A stretch of 61,065 nt of DNA, the filler included, from Dugesia japonica (lineage: Eukaryota): the NCBI GenBank assembly GCA_001938525.1. It is 6 parts of 6 records of this genome, joined end to end, with 100 filler letters (N's around TTAATTAATTAA, not from the genome) between each part and the next. Parts side by side here need not be neighbours in the genome. Positions count along the whole stretch, not along the records: positions 42,603 to 52,726 come from MQRL01578042.1; 5 more parts are not named here. One strand, given 5' to 3'. The notes below the pieces were generated by a model that did no database searches, had not been told where the DNA came from, and worked only from the letters and a program-made list of their open reading frames with translations. The position numbers were made by a program, and so were the translations under genes. Below, piece by piece: positions 1 through 52,726 of the stretch (position 1 is the first letter of the stretch; every line of letters starts with the position of its first letter).

Positions 1-277
1 GAACCCCAGTAATTATATTTATTAATTAATAAATAAAAAGAAATAATAAAATTACAACAATAAATAATAAAAAACAACCATTGTTATAGTGACTGGTGGA
101 CTTGTTTCCTATTGTTACATAATTCTTTTATGTCTGGTTTTATAGAATTTTTAGGCTCTAAAATTTAGGGGATTTAAATTTATAATTTTTTGAAAATTTT
201 ATTATGATATACACGGATCCCTTTGATGTAGCTCTCGGAACCCCAGGACTCCGCGGAGCACACTTGGAGAAACGATT
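1..277 (+). mobile_element. 3' end of a hAT (Charlie/Buster-like) DNA transposon
   Basis: Ends in GGAACCCCAGGACTCCGCGGAGCACACTTGGAGAAACGATTG, resembling the Charlie-type right terminus (..ccgcggaacac..gaaacactg). No coding sequence. Confidence 0.45.
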
Positions 278-42602: not shown

Positions 42603-43050
42603 GCTGCTTCTATTGGTTGATCAATCACATGTCCTTTCTTGGCAATAACTTGAGTCCCATGTTTGATGGTAATTTTCCCGGTGGCAAATCCTTCATCGCA
42701 TTGTTGTCCGGTTAGATGTACAGAATGTCTCACTGTTTCTGGGTCAATGATTGAAGTATAACTGTGATATCCACAATGAAATATGATGTTTTTACCGTTA
42801 CTGTACATTCGCGTACTTGGGCCTTATAGTAATCAGACTCTTGATATAAATGGTAGACGGAATTATTACGGAATGAGATTTTCTCCGGGTTTGCGTCTGG
42901 ACATTCTTCTGTATCCACTAACGAGAATACTTCCTTCCCAACTTGCATTCCATCGCATTCGTATGCTAGTATGGCTTCACTTCTGCCCATCATTAAGAAT
43001 AACAAGAGTATTGTAGTGGTTAACGCTTGCCAGGAGTTTCGACGAGGTCC
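42603..43050 (-). pseudogene. env: Envelope glycoprotein N-terminus, chuvirus (Jingchuvirales)-glycoprotein-like, with internal signal peptide
   Basis: RRNSWQALTTTILLLFLMMGRSEA / ILAYECDG..FSLVDTEECP..HLYQESDY..RECTVTV(K)NIIFHCGYHSYTSII..QQCDEGFATGKI after repairing one frameshift in an A-run at ~42790. Confidence 0.75.
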
Positions 43051-43129
43051 ACGTGTCCATCCATTCTCGATCTCATTTAACTGATCCCGAACAATCCTGA
43101 TTACTCTAGTAGCATTTTCATGAGAGGGC

Positions 43130-43530
43130 TGAGGTTTAGGGCATATTGCCTCAATAAACTTTTCCCATCCCCCATGCTGTTTTATNNNNNNNNNNNNNNN
43201 NNNNNNNNNNNNNNNNNNNNNNNNNNNNNNNNNNNTTTGACGGCTTGCTTCTAGCGATTGTTAGGTGTGTTTGATTAATCAGATGCGCTATGGATACTAC
43301 TATCCTTCCCTTCGTTGGCTGCTCTTGTAATAATTCATCCATTACCCCTTTTAAATTATTTCTTGTACCATGACTGGTGCCTTTAGTGGCGGGAAATTTC
43401 CTAATGGCTGCCTCTATTTCCTTTGCCAATGGCCTAAGACTATCAGATAGCTGAAACTTTCCAATCCATATTTTTAACTCTGGGTATAACATTAATAATA
43501 ATTGCCGTATTACTACTTCGGTTGGCATGT
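43130..43530 (-). CDS. Bcl-2-like domain within ORF2 polyprotein
   Basis: BH3-like LRPLAKEIE, BH1-like VMDELLQEQPTKGRIVVSIAHL, and BH2-like IKQHGGWEKFIE (43150-43185, read in the glycoprotein frame just after the N gap). Confidence 0.7.
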
Positions 43531-44344
43531 CATCATCTGTTGAATTTTCGTGGTATCTTTCTTGTGATACCGTTGCTAGTCGCTTAGTTTGATGGTTTAT
43601 TGATGTGGTTAATCGTTTTTGTTTTAAGGCCTCTGGGTTTTCCGGGGGCTTGGTTCTTGACCGACCTCTATTACGAGGTTCCGTAATTGTTTCCGCATCT
43701 ACTCGGGTGCGTACTGGCTTTGGCAGTATTTCCTCGTCTTCTATTTCTATCGGATTTTCCATCTCTAGTGAGTGGTTTGTATCCATCAAATCATCTATTA
43801 CCGAAGATGGCAATTCTTTTGCTATTCTGCTTAATATTGGTGACAATGGTTGGTCTTCCAATATGTCTTCCTCGTCCAAGTCGACCTTGCTAGGGTCGTA
43901 TTTTTTACTGCGTGCTGGTTCTTTCACCTTGATTTCTTCACTTTTTCTAGTTGGAGGAGAATATTTTGTAATTTGTAAGTCGTCTTTGTCTTCTGCTGAC
44001 TCGTCTGCTGATGGTGATCCAAATATTTCACGTTCCCAATCTTGGCTTGTTTTAGGAGTTTCTTTGGTTTCCCGGGACGCTTCAGTGCTTCCAGATTGAT
44101 CTGTTGTAGGTCTTAATATTTGACTAGCCGCTAGTTGTGTACGGTGTTTATATGCTTTTAACATACCGGATGTCTCTCCCATTATTGGTCTGGTTTTATC
44201 TGCTGCTTTATAGGGATCTNNNNNNNNNNNNNNNNNNNNNNNNNNNNNNNNNNNNNNNNNNNNNNNNNNNNNNNNNNNNNNNNNNNNNNNNNNNNNNNNN
44301 NNNNNNNNNNNNNNNNNNNNNNNNNNNNNNNNNNNNNNNNNNAG

Positions 44345-47300
44345 TTTGTATGGTGGTTTAAATGGCAACTTGTCTCGTAGTTGTTTTACCGTATTATACA
44401 CCGGCATTTTAACCGTGATTTTGTCCCCTTCTGGATCGATTATTCTGAATTTAACTTCCAATGGCGTGGGTTGTCCCATCTCCGCTTTTCTCCATTTAAC
44501 TAGAATTTTACTAAACTGAACTGGATCCCATACATGTGCTACTTTGATAGCTAGTATTAATCGTCGCAATTTTCTAAGATCTTCTACTGCCAAATCTTGT
44601 TGTAAGGCTATATTGTATCGTCGCATGATTTCCGGCTTTATTAACTTATCGCCTACTAGTAATTCGAACAATTTCGGTAAATTGTCTTCTGGTTTTTCAT
44701 CTTTGACCGGGGTGTTGGTCAGAGCTGCTCCCATCTATACTCTTTGATTATTTTGCTCTCGTTTAGAGAGTTTAGCTCTAGCGAATATTAATGGATGTAT
44801 TTCTTCCAGGTAATATTCCACTAACTCCCTAGCTTCCTGCTTCCATTTTTCCTCCGAGACCCGTGGTCGTCGTCTCTTCTCATCCCTTGATGTTAAATAA
44901 ATTTTTAATTTAGTACCTGGCCAAACCCCCATATATTTTACTGGCAATCTCATTTGGTCTGATTCTATTACGTGGCTGTAATAGAGTACTATGTCGTCTT
45001 CCTGAACTGATGTTTGCAATCCAGTTTCCTCCTCGTTAAGGCTACGTTNTTGATTCATAAATTTTACAATCCTCTTCCGCAACTTAGCCCATGGTTCGTT
45101 CATTTGGACCTGCCAACGAATTTCAGTTTCGTCGGGAAATCTGATTGTTACCGTGACGGCTTCGTTGGTTATCATTCAAACTGTGTTATTTAATATTGCA
45201 TCCATTATGTCTTCCGGCATTTAACTTATGGCTCGTAATTGATTTAGCTCTAGAACTAATTCAATGACTTTGTCATGTCTTAATAGTTCCAAGTTTTCTT
45301 CCAAGGTTAAAAGTATTTTCATTATTACTCGCGCCAGACTTCCCCATGTTTTACTGTCTTCCCATAACTCAATATTTATCTGCATTGTTCTGTCATTGAC
45401 TACTTCGAATAACTGTCCACTGTTAATTTCTTGTTCGTATAGTTCCTCTAGTTGTTGTATTACTTCCTCCATAGATTTTACCGGGCCTGGAATGTAATCC
45501 TCTGGTTTCTGTATTTGGAGAAATGTATTTTCTCCGGGTCTTAATCCTACATCCATTAAATGTTGTTTTCCTTCAAACTTTATGGGGAATCTCAGATGAT
45601 CGCTTGTGATTATATAGCTTTTCTGCTGGTCGGCTATATCCAGTGTTTCTATAATTTCTTGTAATTCCCCCGCTGATGTACTGTTAAAATGTGGTATGTG
45701 CATGACAGTCAATTCCGGTTCCTTTCTGGTTTTTTTTGTTTGGTGTCAGATATTTTATCGTGACTTGAAAATCTTCTCCCCTGGCACTTGTTTTCACTGC
45801 ACCAATATACGACTTGATTACTGATTCCTACTTGGCACAATCTTCTCTTGCTATTTCAGTATACTTTGTTAGATACATTAGTAAATTTAATGCTTTCCAA
45901 AATGCTACTCGAGGTATCCTTTCCTTGAAATAACAAAAATCCGAAATTATCTTCGATATCCGCTCTGCCTGCGGCGAACTGAAAGGGCCAGCGAATTCAT
46001 GTTTAAATGGTTACAATCGGGGTTGACCAATATCCTCCGAGATTTCTTCCTCCTGCTCTTCTTCATCTGAGGTTAGGTCTGGTGTGTCATGGTCTTTACT
46101 CCGAACCATGTTTATTTGGGCTTTATTTTCGCCATAAGTGTTTATGAGTCGTTCATTCTCTACCGGTAGTATTTCTTGTAGATATAAGCTCATCATGTTA
46201 AATATGAGTTGATCGGTATCCGGCATTTTCGATATTGGGATGTCTACGGTCATTTTACGCGATGTTAGTTTGATTTCTGTGATCTCCCTTGGCTTGATAT
46301 CATGCAAAAAGATATGGTCCTCTTTCTCGGCTAATATAATCATTGTTGCTCCTGCTTGCATTTTATAGGACTTGAGCGATTTTGGTCATAGCCATTTCTT
46401 GATTGGTTTTATGATATGGTTGATCGTTAGTCCTTCCAGCGTTATCATATCTACCTTTTTTATGCTTCCCTCCTTACTAAGTAGGCTGACTCTGATAGAA
46501 TAGTCGGATATAGTGGATGTATTCTGTACTTCCTCTTCGTANNNNNNNNNNNNNNNNNNNNNNNNNNNNNNNNNNNNNNNNNNNNNNNNNNNNNNATTGC
46601 CAAATCCCGTAAGTTATTCATCATTTTCCAATATACTTTGATATTCACGACTGGTCGCGTTTCTCGTGTTACTCTTAGTAGATCATTGATAGCGTGAAAC
46701 GTGGCGGATTCCTCCGTTATCGGTTTGGTATAATTCATCCGAATATCGCGTATTGTTGGCGTGCCTTCTGGGAATATGACGGATTTTGTAGTAATTATTG
46801 GCAAGTTATCGATATTCTGTATTTTCTGATTCTCTTTTACTTGTTCCTTTATGCCAGTTAATACCTCGGATACGTATAATTCTGTTATCTCTTCCATTCG
46901 CTCCTCGAGATCCGGTGATTGATTCGTCCGTGGCTCCTCGTCTACATCTAACTCACATATTTCTCCGGGCTTTGCGTGGCATTGAAATATGTGTTTGTCC
47001 TCGTCGTTGATCTCAACCAATTTGCCATTTATGAACAGAGGTACCATGTTTAGCCCTAGTTCTCGCCACTTATCGGTAATGGCATCAATTAAATCCATCA
47101 TGGTTATTCCTTGTGGTTTTAACCGACTATATTTAGTCAGTTCCTGTTCATTTTTACCTATATTTAAATATAATTTATAATCCTGAATTTTGGTAGTTGC
47201 CAATATCTCTTCGGCATATTTCTGCCTAATCATGAGCCATTGGTTCTCGATTTCCTCCGGTATTTCTAGTCCATCATATATGTCGTAGATTCTATTCATT

Positions 47301-48047
47301 ATCATCCAATAGGTTTCTCGGGGTAAGTTCTCCTTCTCCATCTGTACTCGGTTAACCATTTCCTCCACTTTACGCATTGCTACTACCTCTCTTGATGGCA
47401 TCTGTTGCATTCTTATCATGTTGCATTTGCCCTCTCTTCTCTCCAATCGCTGCCTGAGGAAGTCGTTAGGCGTCATTAACAACTGTTTCCTCTCTTTCTT
47501 TGTCAGTTTATCTTTCTTCGCGAGTACCGTGGAAAGTATCTTGATTTTAATTGGTAATACTCCTGGTTTATATAGATATTCCATTTCTCCCATGATTTCT
47601 AAAGCTGATCTTCCGGTTTTTGTTATCCAGATGTCATAGTCAATACCGGGGTGTTTGTCCAATACTACGATTTCAATGTCCTCTCCTAGTTTTACTCCAA
47701 AATCGTATAGATGTTTCTTTCGGGCGTTAAAATCTATCATAGCACTTGGAGTGCACACATATGTATCAGTTATGCATGGATAACCTGCTTGATTAAGCGC
47801 CGCCTCTAGATCTTCTACCATTAATCCCGTGAGGGTCAATTTCATGTTACCTTCTGGGCTATATAACCATACTTAGTAATCTGATGATTCCATGTTAGAT
47901 ATTACCCATTCATAATGCACTGGTAACCATTCTGTCCAATCGGGCGTATTCTGGTATTTCCCTTCAGTTTCTATTTCTTCTTGATTCATTTCTAAATGTG
48001 AAACATTGATTAACTTCCCCGTGGTTTTTATCTATATACATATTCAT
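44345..48047 (-). pseudogene. ORF2 polyprotein N-terminal part: six ~230-aa repeats each beginning with a ubiquitin-like (beta-grasp) domain
   Basis: Recurring end motifs KHLYDFGVKLGEDIEIV, KHIFQCHAKPGEICELD, DHIFLHDIKPREITEIK, QHLMDVGLRPGENTFLQ and LPVKYMGVWPGTKLKIY, each followed by an E..ELY..E helix. ORFs 45221-45712, 44735-45175 and 43151-44734 share one frame. Confidence 0.7.
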
Positions 48048-48094
48048 TAAGTAAGTTTACCATTTACACTACTTACAGGTAATTTCTCTTTATT

Positions 48095-49700
48095 TTAAAA
48101 TACCAATATACCCGGTGCCTGGTAGTGTCTAGGCACATACATTGGTAATTCGTGAGGTGCGTTTCCTAGCGGAATTCCCGAATAGTTTGGTGGAGCTAAT
48201 CGTAATTGTCGCTCCCGTTTGCTGCGGTGGTGTTTCTCTTTCTTTGGTTTTGAAACAAGTAGACAAATAATGCTTATTATAAGCACCGTAATAATAATTC
48301 CTCCGATACCTAACGCATAACCTAATTCATAACTTCTTGTTGGTTGAATTGTGGTGGTTCTCATAGATTCTGTAATGGATTTTTCTATTATTTCTATGTG
48401 ATTCCTTCTTGGTTCAAATTTGCTTAAATTTGACATCCAATTGTTCAGAAAATTTGCTCTTTTTTCTTCCTTCTCGCGATTCTGTGTTGTGGTGGTTATC
48501 TGAATTTTGGTAGTATTTGCTAACTTGGGTATGTTTGTGTGTATGGGTATTTTGGTAGTCCCTTTTTGTTTTCCCGTTGCCTTGGTTTTTATTATTATAT
48601 CTTGGTTAATTACCGTGATAAATTCAAATCCCCATAAATCTTTGTCAAATTCTCNAATATTCATCTCTTGATACATTTCCCTTCTCCAATAATCTTTAGT
48701 ATTGAATCTCCATCCCCACTCATCAAGATCCTTGATCGTATGTATTAACAATTGTTCCACCTTCTTCACGAACCGTACATAGTACATACCCTTAATTTTT
48801 TTCACTTGTAAAGAATATGGGCCCGTTGCCAATATGGTTTCCACCCCTTAAATTCTTGATTTANNNNNNNNNNNNNNNNNNNNNNNNNNNNNNNNNNNNN
48901 NNNNNNNNNNNNNTATGGAATGTACTTCTCGGCCCTGAGTGACTGTTATGCTCTTTTGTCCTATTTCTACCCCCTTTTTATTCCATAATTCTGTTTCGTA
49001 TTGCATGCGCTGCCATATAATCGTATGGTACAGGTATTCACTTTTTGGACATATTGTCGTTATTTGTCCTCCGGTATCATTTCGTATCCATTCTTTGTGC
49101 CTGAAGTTATTTTCTACATAATATAATACAGAGTTACTTCCTCGTGATACTTTGAATTCTTTACTTGCTTCGTAAATTAATGGGTTGTTCGGATTTCTCC
49201 ACGTTATGTCCCATACTTTTTCTATCTGCCACTTGTCTATATTGAACCCCAATAATCTTCCTTCCACTGGTTCTTGGCTGAGGAGTTGTATCATAATCCT
49301 TCCTTTTGCTCGGTGTAGTTTAATCATGGTGCTTTTTTGACTTTTTATCACTGGTGTTAAAATTAATTGTCCGTAACCATACATTGCTTGTGTTTTCTGT
49401 TCCCTCTGAAATCCTAAACGACTTATTGTTATGACGTGCATCTTTCCTTCCTTGATGAGTATTCTATGTTCCGTTAAGACTGGTTCATTTACCCAGCATT
49501 CTTGACCTCCGATCCATCTTAGGATCATTATTATAGTGGTTATTATGATTTGTCCACTGGAAATTCCATTCTGAGAAGTTACTTGTACCTGTTGCATTGC
49601 TAAGGTTGGTAACGAAAGTCCTACTAGAATTAACAAAATTAATTAAGTAAACAAAATTAATATGCCATAATACCAACTTGTGTTGATTACCGCCCATAAC
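48095..49700 (-). pseudogene. Type-I membrane glycoprotein at the C-terminus of ORF1 (signal-like segments, ectodomain, Thr-rich stalk, TM helix, PPxY tail)
   Basis: Hydrophobic LILLILVGLSLPTLA and IIITTIIMILRWIGG, sequons NDT/NTT/NLS, stalk TTKIQITTTTQ, TM LGYALGIGGIIITVLIISIICLLV followed by KPKKEK, and PPNY at 48182-48193. Confidence 0.7.
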
Positions 49701-50069
49701 ATCAGGGATGCTTTGACTATTATTTCTTCTGTAATCTCATTCTTGCTTCCTTGTGGTAACTCGTTTTTTGATTTTCTTAGTTTTGATCGATCCACCACAT
49801 CTTGTATCAATGTCATTTTCATTTTTTTCGCCCTTCCAGGCGTTATTCTGACTGATTGTCTCTCTTCTTTTTCCATTCCATCCCCTTGACCGTGAAATGA
49901 TTGTCTCATCAATTTCACTTGTTTTTCCAACCCTTCATTAGGATTCGCGATACTGATTGGTTTCAATTTCCTACAAGCCAATTTGTCTGATCGTATGTCT
50001 AGTAAGGTCATATTTTTTGTTTGTGTTTACTTTGAATAGGTGGTTCGACGATTGGATATCTAACTGTTC

Positions 50070-51390
50070 ATACACTCTAATCCAGTTCCATTGTACTAGC
50101 GTACGGTGAAACACATGTATAGATGTTAGTAATTCTTGACTATAAATATCTGTGCATGGCATGCATAATTATTTTTATAATAAATTGACGAATTGGGGCT
50201 TGAACCGGCATTTTGATTCGAGATCCATCACAGTCTTTCCTTAACCGATTTTCTGGTCTGGATAACCACGCTTTTTGATTGTAAATGGCCTTTAGTGCAT
50301 TTTTAAATATTATCTGTGTTTGTCGGATACATTGTAAACAACTCTCTTCCAATTGCAGTGCTGACAGTGGACAAGTTATTTGGTTAATGTGATTGCAACT
50401 TTCTTTGTATCTTGGTGTCTGGCTCCCCTGGCAAGTGATCGTATAGCATGTAGTGGCATTCATAGCTTCAATTGCCAGAGGTCGACGCATTTGATTATCT
50501 AAACCAAAAGATACGGTTTTAACTTCTTGTGCTATAATGGCTGATTTATCATTAATCATAGATGATGTTATTGGAGTTTGAGAAGTACGAATAATACTTG
50601 GTGTCTTAATTATTTTAGGCATAACCAATTTATTCGAATTATTCAATTTGGTTGTGATTAATGCCATCTTTCCAGTATCCGTGTTTTCGTTGTTGATTTT
50701 ATTATGAAAATCCTGACCTGATGCCCCGCCATCTTTCAGTTTCCTTTCTTTCCTCTGTCTGTCTGCGTATTTTAATACGCCCTCCTTCAATAATCGCGAT
50801 ATTTTTTTCAACTCTGTTTCTATCTTTTCATCTTCTTTTGATTGTAGGTCCGCTTTCTCTTCCGAATTCACATCTTTCTCCGTTAGTTCCCCTTCCCCAT
50901 CTTCTTCAGACTCAGCGTCCTCGCTGAGACGTCTCTTCCTTAATAATGATTCTAGCCCGCTCCATGGTGGAGGGTCAACTGGTTTAGACCATAATACCAA
51001 CCAGTCTCATACTATTAATATCGTGTGGAAGTTCTCAATAGCTCGAGTGAGGGTTTCATTATAAATACTGACACAACGTTCGCATAAGGTGTGTATTTCG
51101 TCTTGTTCCAATGGTACTTGAATTGTTAGCTTGTCATGCATTTTCGCACATCGTTTTCTACTGAGTTTATTTTGTTGTAACAACTCAAGTCTGCGACTAG
51201 CGATTTCCCGCAATGTTGATTTCAAAAATGATTGCAATTTCCATATGCATGCAAGGCAATTTGCCTCGATTAGAGTTGGTGAGATTGGGCATGTCACCTG
51301 AGAGAAGTGCGCACAACAGTTCTCGGGCACTAGTGCCTGCGTTCCTCGTGGAATTATAGGATATATTGCCGTGGTACCCAATGCTTTAAC
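50070..51390 (-). pseudogene. Two copies of an unrecognised ~125-aa Cys-rich domain separated by a charged/low-complexity linker (ORF1 extension)
   Basis: CAHFSQVTCPIS..CLACI..RKRC..LCERCVSIY..FHTILIV*DW aligns with CNHINQITCPLS..CLQCI..RKDC..LCMPCTDIY..FHRTLVQWNW. Confidence 0.75.
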
Positions 51391-51479
51391 TCGCTGGCTT
51401 AATTGACCTAATATGAATACTGGGGTGGATATTTTCCCGAGTATCATTATAGCTTGTTGTGATCGTAATTGGTAACTAT

Positions 51480-52726
51480 TTAACTCCAGATTTTCCGACT
51501 TACGTGGCCTACCTGGCCCTCTATGTTCCGTCGCAGTGGGTGCGGTACTTGTGGATGGCGCAGTTTCATCGCCGCCTTTTTGCATAGGTTGGCGTCGTAT
51601 ATCTTTGGTTTTTCTAATAGGTTCCCTTTCCTTCGAACTTTGAGATTAGTTTCCGTTACTTCACTTACTTCATATGGTCCTTGCCATGGCCTTTTTAGTT
51701 TTGATGTAGTGCCGACACAAATGGCTGGTAAATTGACCAATACCATGTCGCCTTTTTTAAAGGAATGCTGCACTGCTGATTTATCTTGTAAATCTTTATA
51801 ACTCTCCTGGTAAAACCCTACATTCTCCTTGACTTGTTTCCATATTTTCTGCATAGTTTCTTTGAAATTTGCAGCGAAATCTGTTTCGTCTTAGTATTGT
51901 GTTATCAGTGGTTGGAATTCCAAGTCAATGGGCATGTTACACTCTCTGCCGTACATAAGACCAAACGGAGTGTATTTTGTTGCTGGATGTACACTCATAC
52001 GGTAGGCAAATAAACACAGTTGAATATGTTTATCCCAGTTATTTCGTTCCTTTTGAGCGTAACTGGATAACATATTGATCAAGGTTTTATTAAATCGTTC
52101 CATTAATCCATCTGTTTGTGGACGATAAGGTGAGGTTCGTAACTGGTGAATTTTGAGGAAGTTCGATATTTCTACTAATATGTTGCTCATAAAGTTCTTC
52201 CCTTGATAGGTCAATATTTTCTTTGGTGTGCCATATCTGCTGAAAAATTTTCGTACCAGAATATCTGCTATGTAGTCGCTTTTTGATTTTTCATAGGGAA
52301 TGCCTCTGGGAATTTCGACAAGTAATCCATGATTGTTAGTATGTAGATGTTTCCACTCAGCGTTGGTGGTAACGGTCCAACTACGTCTATGGCTATTATT
52401 TCCATAGGTGCGGCGGGGACGGCTATTGGTTTTAATAATGCTTTCACGCGTTTACCAGTTCCTCTTCTGGCAAAACATATTTGACATTCGGCGATCCATT
52501 CCTTCACTGTCTCTGTCATGTGGGGCCAGTAATACTTCTGTCTTAATTTTGACTCGATTTTCTTATGGGACATGTGTCCTCCTAGTGCTCCGTTGTGATA
52601 TTGCTCGAGTAATTTATCTCGTCTTGCTTTAGGAATGACTAATACAGTATTTTCAGCCATCCTTTAGTGACTGCATAACGCCCTCCGTTTTTCTTTAAGT
52701 GTTCTTTCATCTTGGGTTCGCATTCT
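51480..52726 (-). pseudogene. pol: Ty3/gypsy integrase (HHCC, D,D35E, GPY/F) followed by an AT-hook
   Basis: HNGALGGH..YYWP..CQIC, IAIDVVGP, LTYQGKNF (second Asp mutated), YRPQTDGLMERFN, KLKRPWQGPYEV, and RGPGRPRK at 51499-51522. Confidence 0.95.

What the first reader, a model, noticed from the sequence alone, without database searches (positions are those of the whole stretch)
42603..52726. Giant gypsy retroelement organised like a complex enveloped virus: two membrane proteins, a Bcl-2 mimic and a ubiquitin-like array
Seen: a Ty3/gypsy integrase (GPY motif) is followed by ~9 kb of same-strand coding DNA. The many short ORFs join into two polyproteins, because neighbours share a frame across single stops (51007/50140; 49643/48848/48095; 45221/44735/43151) or differ by one frameshift. 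ORF1 runs pol, AT-hook, Cys domain x2, type-I membrane protein, and stops at 48095. ORF2 starts at ~48047 and runs UBL repeat x6, acidic low-complexity region, Bcl-2-like domain, hydrophobic segment, glycoprotein. Known: ordinary gypsy elements carry at most one env; errantivirus env is baculovirus F-like; very large gypsy elements (Burro) were described in the planarian Schmidtea mediterranea. Inference: this is an infectious or cell-to-cell mobile endogenous retrovirus-like lineage with its own entry apparatus and host-manipulation modules. I do not know whether this exact architecture is already annotated.
Basis: partly seen in the sequence, partly recalled or inferred. Interest (0 to 1): 0.95.

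Follow-up and report, generated by a model that had tools for sequence, protein, structure and literature searches.

The report
Decayed Burro-like giant gypsy retroelement fragment
This 10-kb stretch is a broken, dead copy of a giant gypsy-type endogenous retrovirus carrying a ubiquitin-like / Bcl-2-like / viral fusion-glycoprotein cassette, a combination already published for the planarian "Burro" elements, so it is real but mostly not new.

Summary
The whole minus strand of 42603-52726 is former coding DNA, needing 21 interruptions against 92 on the plus strand and about 122 in shuffles. It starts with a Ty3/gypsy integrase (H2C2, GPY). One strand carries an AT-hook, a duplicated Cys domain and a type-I membrane protein. 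After a short spacer come at least 5 repeat units, an acidic stretch and a Bcl-2-like region. That region is fused in frame to a signal peptide and a PF24664 fusion glycoprotein, which the piece edge cuts.

- **Already published:** the ubiquitin/SUMO-like, BCL2-like and mononegavirus-like Env cassette is described for planarian Burro/GYPSM1 elements (PMC6431247).
- **This copy is dead:** the two reading units have at least 9 and 10 breaks, and four assembly gaps cannot be bridged.
- **Gene order differs:** all five closest relatives that carry env (metagenome contigs, 48-53% integrase identity) have it upstream of pol. The pol-then-env order rests on this one decayed copy.

Ubiquitin-like and Bcl-2 labels for the window are supported only through relatives, not by the window's own sequence.

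Possibly new: a membrane-anchored extension of pol shared by all relatives, and a Bcl-2-like domain that shares its hydrophobic anchor with the env signal peptide.

The parts
48095..52726 (-). First reading unit (broken gene, cut at the piece edge): 3' part of pol (integrase), continuing into an AT-hook, two Cys domains and a type-I membrane protein. At least 9 interruptions (about 5 in-frame stops and 4 frame changes) plus one assembly gap.
   Evidence: colinear with the pol C-terminal extensions of relatives
52463..52636 (-). Integrase zinc-binding H2C2 domain
   Evidence: Pfam PF17921, E 7.2e-19, 68.1 bits; 48-55% identity to metagenomic gypsy integrases
51672..51680 (-). GPY motif of the integrase C-terminal domain
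   Evidence: read in the translation; this piece matches the relatives' integrase C-termini at E 1e-16 to 1e-20
51499..51522 (-). AT-hook-like basic motif (GRPRK core)
   Evidence: read in the translation; L003 has a weak Pfam AT_hook hit (E 0.027), but in its pre-env ORF, while L005 has a basic RPRK motif just after IN; no Pfam call in the window itself
51103..51462 (-). Cys domain, copy 1 (invariant C, H, C, C, C, C pattern shared with copy 2); fold unknown
   Evidence: BLASTP copy 1 against copy 2, E 2e-15 and 4e-16; alignment A6; no Pfam or PDB match
50185..50553 (-). Cys domain, copy 2, preceded by an acidic/basic stretch
48095..49700 (-). Type-I membrane protein part of the first unit: hydrophobic leader, ectodomain of about 400 aa with a Thr-rich stalk, TM helix at 48254-48310, basic cytoplasmic tail with PPNY at 48182-48193, then the stop codon. 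Spans the gap 48864-48913.
   Evidence: the pol ORFs of L001-L006 end in a hydrophobic TM-like segment (strong in five, KD 2.75-3.04; weaker in L002) and L008 has a separate 383-aa ORF with weak TM-protein Pfam hits; L005's tail has PPSY
47846..48094 (-). Short spacer between the two units. AATAAA follows the stop directly. It contains a short leader ORF in the frame of the second unit. There are no repeats, no tRNA-like sequence, and no room for an LTR of the size seen in relatives.
42603..47845 (-). Second reading unit (broken gene, cut at the piece edge): repeat array, acidic region, Bcl-2-like region, signal peptide, N-terminus of the fusion glycoprotein. At least 8 interruptions from the first ATG (10 with the leader) plus three assembly gaps.
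44345..47845 (-). Array of at least 5 units of about 100 aa, each a putative ubiquitin-like beta-grasp followed by a short helix with a conserved LY..E(I/V)L-type motif
   Evidence: shuffle tests z 3.2-8.2; alignments A1, A3, A4. The profile of window units plus three relatives' units hits ubiquitin folds (E 9.5e-6). The window-only profile does not. The AF2 model was poor.
43634..44101 (-). Acidic, Ser/Thr/Pro-rich low-complexity region
   Evidence: the second-unit piece that carries this stretch is 17% Asp+Glu; the acidic run is seen in the translation; L003 has an equivalent acidic stretch
43057..43537 (-). Bcl-2-like region (BH1-like stretch, gap 43186-43235, BH2-like GGW stretch, linker)
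   Evidence: No direct Pfam or PDB hit. It aligns with the Bcl-2-like N-terminus of L003's env protein (A2), which hits PF00452 (E 7e-5) and 92 Bcl-xL/Bcl-2 chains. The joint profile improves to E 1.7e-4. The BH2 side scores z 4.45 against L003; the BH1 side is not significant. AF2 gives 5 helices at pLDDT 52.8.
42964..43026 (-). Hydrophobic segment: the signal peptide of env, in frame with the Bcl-2-like region. It ends in the (I/L/T)xA | (Y/F)(D/E)C junction shared by all relatives.
42603..42963 (-). N-terminal ~120 aa of the fusion glycoprotein (PF24664), with one frame change; cut by the piece edge
   Evidence: Pfam 33.4 bits against a gathering score of 27; 45% identity to L003 env, E 2e-17; tblastn to the env of L001-L005

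Best explanation
The piece is the 3' two-thirds of one decayed, non-functional copy of a giant Ty3/gypsy endogenous retrovirus. It is of the same kind as the planarian Burro elements and a group of metagenomic relatives.

Reading the contig at face value, the intact ancestor made two long products.

1. Pol. Its integrase continues into a DNA-binding-like AT-hook, two Cys domains and, after an internal signal sequence, a type-I membrane protein. That protein's cytoplasmic tail carries a PPxY motif, a candidate Nedd4/ESCRT-recruiting budding signal (inference).

2. A second product starting about 50-250 nt further on. It has an array of ubiquitin-like units, an acidic linker and a Bcl-2-like domain. 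It then runs in the same frame through a hydrophobic segment into a chuvirus/mononegavirus-type fusion glycoprotein.

Inferred mechanism:
- The hydrophobic segment inserts into the ER membrane as the env signal peptide.
- Signal peptidase cuts after the conserved xA | YEC junction.
- The cut leaves the cytosolic ubiquitin-like/Bcl-2-like part tail-anchored, as cellular Bcl-2 proteins are, and the glycoprotein in the lumen.
- The Bcl-2-like part would keep the producing cell alive.
- The glycoprotein would mediate entry into neighbouring cells.
- The ubiquitin-like units lack a C-terminal GG. They are more likely interaction modules than cleavable ubiquitin.

Shown: the domain order, the repeats, the in-frame fusion, the decay, and the kinship of integrase and env. 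Inferred: the topology, the cleavage, the anti-apoptotic role, and that pol-then-env is the family's real gene order.
For: - Strand-wide former coding capacity.
- Integrase and env both find the same relatives, L001-L005 (IN 48-53% identity, env N-terminus 32-44%).
- L003 has the same cassette order: two ubiquitin-like units (weak PF00240, E 0.0034), an acidic stretch, an AT-hook, a Bcl-2 homology region (PF00452 E 7e-5; 92 Bcl-xL/Bcl-2 PDB chains at about 1e-3), a linker, a signal peptide and env.
- Adding the window's rows strengthens the Bcl-2 profile (E 1.7e-4, 94 hits, all Bcl-xL/Bcl-2). It also strengthens the top ubiquitin hit (9.5e-6 against 8.7e-3).
- The estimated gap size (50 nt, about 17 codons) fits the 20 residues L003 has between the two aligned stretches.
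- A membrane-anchored extension after IN is present in L001-L006, and in L008 as a separate ORF.
- The end of the membrane protein, the spacer and the first repeat unit lie on one gap-free stretch (48863-46596). That adjacency does not depend on scaffolding.
- No repeat, tandem repeat or tRNA-like sequence marks an element boundary there.
- L006 also has a ubiquitin-like ORF downstream of pol.
- Literature: Burro carries Ubi2/SUMO-like, then BCL2, then Env in frame (PMC6431247).
Against: - All five relatives that carry env, and Burro, have it upstream of PR-RT-IN, preceded by gag.
- No gag is seen in the piece.
- The RNase_T ORF that follows pol in L002, L004, L005 and L006 is missing here.
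- The accessory pieces have no significant sequence similarity to any relative.
- The window's own Bcl-2-like and ubiquitin-like stretches hit nothing on their own.
- The BH1 side is not significantly similar to L003 (z 1.1).
- Both AlphaFold models were of low confidence and Foldseek gave nothing.
- No second copy of this family could be found.
Confidence: 0.6

Rival explanations
1. The domain inventory is right, but the gene order is not that of a functional element. The family's true order would be gag, ubiquitin-like units, Bcl-2-like, env, PR-RT-RH-IN, membrane protein, as in Burro and L001-L005. This locus would join the 3' end of one copy to the middle of another. The cause could be a deletion or recombination between adjacent copies, a very short LTR hidden in the spacer, or a contig-level assembly chimera in a repeat-rich draft genome.
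For: - Env lies 4.3-7.6 kb upstream of IN in all five env-carrying relatives.
- Gag precedes the cassette in L003, L004 and L005.
- The literature gives the same order for Burro and for flatworm GAG-ENV-POL elements.
- The piece comes from a gapped scaffold with four N runs.
- AATAAA sits right after the membrane protein's stop, as in an LTR R region.
- The RNase_T ORF and gag are missing exactly at the junction.
Against: - The junction lies inside a gap-free stretch.
- The spacer is at most 225 nt and has none of the tandem repeats seen in the relatives' 5' regions.
- Both sides show the same decay rate, about 2 interruptions per kb.
- L006 shows a ubiquitin-like ORF downstream of pol.
- Module order varies among relatives: the PR-like/ankyrin block lies before pol in L003 and after IN in L006.
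- Flips of ENV and POL order are reported to have happened several times (PMC13524379).
Confidence: 0.3
2. The 'Bcl-2-like' and 'ubiquitin-like' labels for the window are chance motif resemblances. The second unit would be an unrelated lineage-specific N-terminal extension of env.
For: - No Pfam, PDB-sequence or Foldseek hit for any window piece alone.
- BLASTP of the window region against L003's Bcl-2-like region finds nothing.
- The BH1 side scores z 1.1.
- AF2 pLDDT was 44.6 and 52.8.
Against: - The position is the same as the proven Bcl-2 homology region of L003 and the published BCL2 motif of Burro, directly before the env signal peptide.
- The BH2 side scores z 4.45, reached by 4 of 2000 shuffles.
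- MAFFT places both window rows on the BH1 and BH2 columns without guidance.
- The joint profile scores better, not worse, against Bcl-xL/Bcl-2.
- The same holds for the top ubiquitin hit.
Confidence: 0.15
3. The accessory ORFs are exons of host genes (a host Bcl-2 gene, ubiquitin-like genes, a membrane protein) that happen to lie between an integrase fragment and an env fragment. They would not be part of a retroelement.
For: Bcl-2 and ubiquitin-like domains are ordinarily cellular. No copy number could be established.
Against: - About 8.5 kb is read continuously on the same strand with no intron-like non-coding stretches.
- The Bcl-2-like region is open in frame into the env signal peptide.
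- IN runs on into the next domains, colinear with relatives.
- The same cassette sits inside intact retroelement ORFs in L003 and Burro.
- The decay is pseudogene-like throughout.
Confidence: 0.03

Closest known systems
Burro / GYPSM1 giant gypsy-like LTR retrotransposons of planarians (Jurka 2007; Grohme et al. 2018; Arkhipova & Yushenova 2019, PMC6431247)
   Same: - Gypsy-type PR-RT-RH-IN with many extra domains.
- Ubiquitin/SUMO-like domain, then a BCL2-like motif, then an Env similar to mononegavirus fusion glycoproteins, with env translated in frame with upstream cytosolic domains.
- Ankyrin repeats, seen here in relatives L003 and L006.
- Decaying copies with stops and frameshifts are reported in Dugesia japonica.
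   Different: - In Burro the cassette lies between gag and PR inside one ORF1 of 4,873-5,140 aa. Here it follows IN and a membrane protein as a separate unit.
- No MATH, BIR, Smc, AIR1 or dUTPase signal was found in the piece.
- Here the ubiquitin-like module is an array of at least 5 units.
- A membrane-anchored extension of IN is not mentioned in the review.
- No Burro sequence was available, so direct similarity is untested.
GAG-ENV-POL 'ancient errantiviruses' with gB-type (class III) Env in Nematoda, Bryozoa and Platyhelminthes (Chary & Hayashi 2026, PMC13524379)
   Same: Ty3/gypsy pol combined with a non-F-type glycoprotein. That paper likens the chuvirus-type glycoprotein to herpesvirus gB. 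Relatives L001-L005 have the same env-before-pol order.
   Different: - In the window env comes after IN.
- The paper does not mention accessory or Bcl-2 domains.
- The fold class of the window's env was not tested here.
- The 2019 review reports HHpred similarity of Burro Env to gypsy (F-type) Env instead.
Metagenomic relatives found here: L001 (NCBI DNYW01000170.1), L002-L005 (ENA ERZ25039515), L006 and L008 (ENA ERZ27235085)
   Same: - Closest integrases (48-53% identity to the H2C2 piece over L001-L006; L008's protein 48%) and closest env N-termini (32-44%, L001-L005).
- Pol ends in a membrane anchor.
- L003 has ubiquitin-like units, an acidic stretch, an AT-hook and a Bcl-2 region fused to env.
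- L006 has a ubiquitin-like ORF after pol.
   Different: - The relatives have intact long ORFs.
- Env is upstream of pol wherever it is present.
- Gag is present.
- An RNase_T exonuclease ORF follows pol.
- The accessory regions share no detectable sequence similarity with the window.
Insect errantiviruses (gypsy, ZAM and others) and mosquito BEL/Pao 'Anakin'
   Same: Both are LTR retroelements that captured a viral fusion glycoprotein. Errantiviruses have the GAG-POL-ENV order that the window shows at face value. Anakin's glycoprotein is chuvirus-like, like PF24664.
   Different: - Errantivirus Env is F-type.
- Anakin is BEL/Pao, not gypsy.
- Neither has ubiquitin-like or Bcl-2 domains, nor a second membrane protein.
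Viral Bcl-2 homologues of large DNA viruses (herpes-, pox-, asfarviruses); named from general knowledge, not tested here
   Same: The likely working principle is the same: a captured or convergent Bcl-2-fold protein that blocks death of the infected cell.
   Different: Those are separate genes of DNA viruses. Here the domain is part of an env precursor of a retroelement, and its membrane anchor doubles as the env signal peptide.

Membership tests
Ty3/gypsy (Metaviridae-type) integrase | N-terminal H2C2 zinc-binding domain | tested here: met
   PF17921, E 7.2e-19, 68.1 bits against a gathering score of 25.5
Ty3/gypsy (Metaviridae-type) integrase | DDE catalytic core (rve) | tested here: inconclusive
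   rve 17.8 bits and rve_3 20.6 bits, both below gathering, because the core is split by breaks. The pieces match relatives' cores at 50-61% identity.
Ty3/gypsy (Metaviridae-type) integrase | GPY/F motif in the C-terminal domain | tested here: met
   GPY read at 51672-51680
Ty3/gypsy (Metaviridae-type) element | Gypsy-type RT/RNase H, gag, LTRs, PBS/PPT | not testable with these tools
   These lie outside the piece. No direct, inverted or tandem repeat and no tRNA-like sequence is inside it. Relatives have RVT_1, RT_RNaseH and gag.
Burro-like giant gypsy elements | Ubiquitin/SUMO-like domain upstream of the BCL2-like motif | tested here: inconclusive
   The repeat array is real. A ubiquitin fold is supported only by the joint profile with relatives (E 9.5e-6). 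It is not supported by the window alone or by AF2.
Burro-like giant gypsy elements | BCL2-like motif directly upstream of Env | tested here: inconclusive
   The position and the BH2-like stretch match L003 (z 4.45). The joint profile gives E 1.7e-4 against Bcl-xL/Bcl-2. No direct hit.
Burro-like giant gypsy elements | Env related to mononegavirus fusion glycoproteins, translated in frame with upstream domains | tested here: met
   PF24664 at 33.4 bits against 27. The frame is open from the last gap through the Bcl-2-like stretch and the signal peptide into env.
Burro-like giant gypsy elements | Cassette located between gag and PR (env before pol) | tested here: not met
   In the piece, IN and the membrane protein precede the cassette and no gag lies between them. 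Whether this reflects the family or only this locus is unknown.
Burro-like giant gypsy elements | Sequence similarity to Burro-1..4 / GYPSM1 | not testable with these tools
   No Burro sequence is in the searchable collections. The best integrase relatives are metagenomic, at 55% identity or less.
Bcl-2 family (PF00452) | BH1 and BH2 motifs in a helical bundle, with a C-terminal hydrophobic anchor | tested here: inconclusive
   The Pfam model does not hit the window. AF2 predicts 5 helices at pLDDT 52.8 and Foldseek finds nothing. The BH2-like GGW stretch and a hydrophobic segment about 45 aa later are present. Relative L003 hits PF00452 below gathering (23.7 against 31.4) and 92 PDB Bcl-xL/Bcl-2 chains.
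Ubiquitin-like (beta-grasp) domains | Match to ubiquitin-family profiles or structures; C-terminal GG for cleavable ubiquitin | tested here: inconclusive
   No Pfam hit in the window. Relatives: PF00240 E 0.0034 (L003) and 0.039 (L006), PF11976 0.092. Profile A3 hits ubiquitin and the NUB1 ubiquitin-like domain. No unit ends in GG.
PF24664 Monjiviricetes_fusion glycoprotein | Score above the Pfam gathering threshold | tested here: met
   33.4 bits against 27 for the stretch after the last gap. Only the first ~130 of 653 profile positions are inside the piece.
Insect errantivirus | F-type (baculovirus F-like) Env | tested here: not met
   The only env family hit is PF24664.

The most novel reading that the evidence does not exclude
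A Burro-like lineage in which the ubiquitin-like / Bcl-2-like / env cassette has moved downstream of pol and become a separate, probably subgenomically expressed, gene. Two further features would go with it. First, every member of the wider lineage makes a second membrane protein as a C-terminal extension of integrase. Second, one hydrophobic segment serves both as the tail anchor of the Bcl-2-like domain and as the env signal peptide. The entry protein and the death-blocking protein would then be made in fixed 1:1 amounts at the same membrane.
Probability: 0.35. Interest if true: 0.6.

Novelty: new member of a known kind. Interest (0 to 1): 0.4.

Why it matters
This copy adds little on that point.

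What the comparison adds:
- **Wider distribution.** The same cassette (ubiquitin-like units, acidic stretch, AT-hook, Bcl-2 homology, env) sits in an intact metagenomic element, L003. The kind is therefore not confined to one decayed genome copy.
- **Membrane-anchored pol.** All relatives extend pol beyond integrase into a membrane-anchored protein. This feature is not mentioned in the papers read here. It would make these elements two-membrane-protein retroviruses.
- **Exonuclease ORF.** Several relatives carry an RNase_T-type exonuclease ORF after pol.
- **Fused Bcl-2 and env.** The Bcl-2-like domain is fused to the env signal peptide. This suggests a simple way to make a tail-anchored survival factor and a fusogen from one precursor.

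If the pol-then-env order is real, it is one more example of env and pol changing places in gypsy-like elements.

Tried and rejected
**Searches that found nothing**
- The search for homologous proteins with the longest repeat-array piece: nothing.
- The same tool with the integrase piece: nothing at E 1e-20 or better in the allowed length range.
- The same tool with the Bcl-2-like N-terminus of L003's env: only L003's own protein.
- Exact look-up of one window ORF: not on record.
- The search for related loci in viral contigs with two accessory pieces: nothing.
- The search for related loci in metagenome contigs: nothing with the repeat-array piece. The integrase piece gave a single relative at 42% identity, L007, not followed up.

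The host species and other copies therefore stayed out of reach. The closest integrase relatives are all unnamed metagenome contigs.

**Structure and fold tests**
- AlphaFold2 of a repeat unit with a 5-row alignment: pLDDT 44.6.
- AlphaFold2 of the Bcl-2-like C-terminal stretch alone: pLDDT 52.8.
- Foldseek against the PDB with the second model: no hit at E 0.001 or better.
- PDB sequence or profile searches found nothing relevant. The queries were the acidic/Bcl-2-like piece, the repeat-array piece, two window-only repeat profiles, the 54 aa after the last gap, and the Cys-domain profile.
- The fold of the Cys domains and of the membrane protein's ectodomain remains unknown.

**Comparison with relatives**
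- phmmer, hmmsearch and tblastn of all accessory pieces against the 150 integrase relatives and against the ORFs of loci L001-L005: nothing significant except env.
- tblastn of the same pieces against L006: nothing significant beyond the integrase.

**Readings considered and rejected**
- Chance ORFs: excluded.
- Host exons: see rival explanations.
- F-type errantivirus env: excluded by Pfam.
- An LTR inside the piece: no repeats were found.

**Not done, by rule**
- No joining of pieces across frames or gaps.
- No consensus.
- No filling of the N runs.

Full report
**1. What is in the piece**

Only window 42603-52726 was used. It holds four N runs and two single N. All long ORFs lie on the minus strand.

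A dynamic-programming count gives the fewest in-frame stops plus frame changes needed to read through the piece, with gaps counted as free. It is 21 on the minus strand, 92 on the plus strand and 108-136 in 20 shuffles. So the whole 10 kb is former coding DNA of one strand, and this copy is dead.
- The second unit needs at least 8 from its first ATG, or 10 with its leader.

The only sizeable stretch without a long open frame is 225 nt, between the two units. The piece has no direct, inverted or tandem repeat and no tRNA-like sequence.

**2. The gaps**

Continuity cannot be shown at any gap.
- At 46542-46595 and 43186-43235, the frame that runs nominally through the N run is probably not the true one. 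Another frame is open from the gap edge and carries the expected domain: half a repeat unit at the first, and the BH2-like stretch, signal peptide and env at the second.
- At 44220-44342 both sides are open in the same nominal frame.
- At 48864-48913 the two halves of the membrane protein are linked only by analogy with relatives, where leader, ectodomain and anchor form one ORF.

I filled no gap and joined no pieces.

**3. First unit**

Pfam finds Integrase_H2C2 (E 7e-19) and weak rve and rve_3 hits. GPY is read directly. The next pieces carry:
- an AT-hook-like GRPRK;
- two copies of a Cys domain, 28% identical, E 2e-15 to 4e-16;
- a basic stretch and a long hydrophobic leader;
- an ectodomain of about 400 aa with a Thr-rich stalk;
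- one strong TM helix and a basic tail with PPNY.

Nothing in Pfam or the PDB matches the Cys domain or the ectodomain.

**4. Second unit**

After a spacer that begins with AATAAA comes an array of units of about 100 aa. Four units are mutually similar (z 3.2-8.2) and a fifth matches one of them (z 6.7). The sixth, partial unit is not supported. Then comes an acidic low-complexity stretch, followed by a helical region.

After the last gap one frame is open for 151 codons. In order it holds a GGW-containing stretch, a linker, a hydrophobic segment and the start of a PF24664 fusion glycoprotein (33.4 bits against a gathering score of 27). The glycoprotein is cut by the piece edge.

**5. Relatives**

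A full HMMER scan with the integrase piece gave 31,613 hits. The best single-stretch hits were 50-55% identical, and all ten whose clusters were looked up come from metagenome assemblies. I fetched seven contigs (L001-L006 and L008).

- **Env position.** In all five contigs that contain env, it lies 4.3-7.6 kb upstream of IN. Gag (capsid and CCHC knuckles) precedes it in L003-L005.
- **Pol extension.** In L001-L006 the pol ORF runs on after IN for 325 aa or more and ends in a hydrophobic anchor (weaker in L002). L005's tail has PPSY. L008 has the membrane protein as a separate ORF.
- **Exonuclease.** Four relatives then carry an RNase_T exonuclease ORF. The window lacks it.
- **The cassette in L003.** L003 is the key contig. 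After gag, a 706-aa ORF has two ubiquitin-like units (weak PF00240), an acidic stretch and an AT-hook. The env ORF starts with a region that hits Pfam Bcl-2 (E 7e-5, below gathering) and 92 PDB chains, those listed all Bcl-xL or Bcl-2, over BH1 to BH2. A linker, a signal peptide and env follow.

**6. Are the window's own regions Bcl-2-like and ubiquitin-like?**

Not by direct evidence.
- Pfam, PDB-sequence and window-only profile searches find nothing.
- Both AlphaFold models are poor and Foldseek finds nothing.

Indirect evidence for the Bcl-2-like region:
- MAFFT puts the two window rows, kept apart, on L003's BH1 and BH2 columns.
- The joint profile hits 94 PDB chains, the 60 listed all Bcl-xL or Bcl-2, at E 1.7e-4. 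L003 alone gave 1e-3.
- The BH2 side is similar to L003 at z 4.45. The BH1 side is not, at z 1.1.

Indirect evidence for the repeat units:
- A profile of five window units plus three relatives' units hits a redesigned ubiquitin at E 9.5e-6 and the NUB1 ubiquitin-like domain at 8.8e-4.
- The relatives alone give 8.7e-3 and 9.6e-4, plus ISG15.

I rate both labels likely, at about 0.7 each, but not proven.

**7. What is known**

Arkhipova & Yushenova 2019 (PMC6431247) summarise Burro/GYPSM1. It is a giant gypsy-like LTR element of planarians whose ORF1 runs Gag..., MATH, Ubi2/SUMO-like, BCL2-like, Env, PR, dUTPase, RT, RH, IN. Its Env gives hits to mononegavirus fusion glycoproteins and lies in frame between gag and pol. 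The element also has ankyrin repeats and accessory ORFs. Decaying copies are reported in Dugesia japonica.

Chary & Hayashi 2026 (PMC13524379) describe GAG-ENV-POL gypsy elements with gB-type Env in flatworms, bryozoans and nematodes. They note that this order arose in several clades.

A full-text search ranked no relevant LTR-retrotransposon paper that mentions Bcl-2.

**8. What remains open**

The window shows IN and the membrane protein followed by the cassette, with no LTR, gag or exonuclease between them.

For taking this at face value:
- The junction lies inside a gap-free stretch.
- The spacer has none of the tandem repeats seen upstream of the relatives' ORFs.
- Decay is equal on both sides.
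- L006 has a ubiquitin-like ORF after pol.
- Accessory modules clearly move about among relatives.

Against it:
- All five relatives with env, and Burro, have the other order.
- This is a single decayed locus in a gapped draft assembly.

I put about 0.6 on the face-value reading and about 0.3 on a locus-specific rearrangement or chimera.

**9. Mechanism (inferred)**

- Both membrane proteins are made behind cytosolic polyprotein parts through internal signal sequences.
- For the second unit, cleavage at the conserved junction after the hydrophobic segment would leave the ubiquitin-like/Bcl-2-like part tail-anchored in the membrane and env in the lumen.
- PPxY in the other protein's tail suggests recruitment of budding machinery.

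None of this applies to the present copy, which is a fossil.

- While reading translations I reasoned about where individual stops lie at a few junctions.

No contig looked human.

Noticed in passing
L002 9547-11622; L004 13863-15191; L005 8967-10649; L006 8000-9331: Four of the metagenomic relatives carry an ORF after pol that looks like a DEDD-type exonuclease. RNase_T (PF00929) is on record or tested for L002 and L006 (E 1.5e-11 in L006). Pfam found nothing for the L004 and L005 ORFs, which resemble it only by eye. The papers read here do not mention it for Burro, and the window lacks it.
   Followed up: partly
L003 4022-4113: The 706-aa ORF with the ubiquitin-like units and the env ORF overlap by about 90 nt, in frames that differ by +1, inside what should be one Bcl-2-like domain. 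This could be a programmed +1 frameshift (as in Ty elements), an assembly indel or a real break.
   Followed up: no
L001 (NCBI DNYW01000170.1, protein HBK71150.1): A 9-kb contig filed under a Flavobacteriaceae metagenome-assembled genome is one 2,627-aa ORF reading env, PR, RT, RH, IN and a membrane anchor. It is almost certainly eukaryotic retroelement DNA binned into a bacterial genome.
   Followed up: partly
window 48182-48193; L005 pol C-terminal tail: A PPxY motif (PPNY in the window, PPSY in L005) sits in the cytoplasmic tail of the post-integrase membrane protein. It is a candidate late-domain or Nedd4-binding signal.
   Followed up: partly
window 43605-44099 (+): A 164-aa plus-strand ORF lies antisense to the acidic low-complexity region. 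It reads as a Ser-rich low-complexity product and is most likely a by-product of composition, not a gene.
   Followed up: no
L003 6342-10035; L006 262-6066: Extra PR-like (gag-asp_protease) and ankyrin-repeat modules lie before pol in L003 and after IN in L006. Accessory modules therefore change place within this lineage. Ankyrin repeats are also reported for Burro.
   Followed up: partly
L001 11-217; L002 1-700; L004 209-1222: Arrays of tandem repeats (periods of about 32-105 nt) lie upstream of the giant ORFs of relatives, as drawn for Burro. The window has none.
   Followed up: partly
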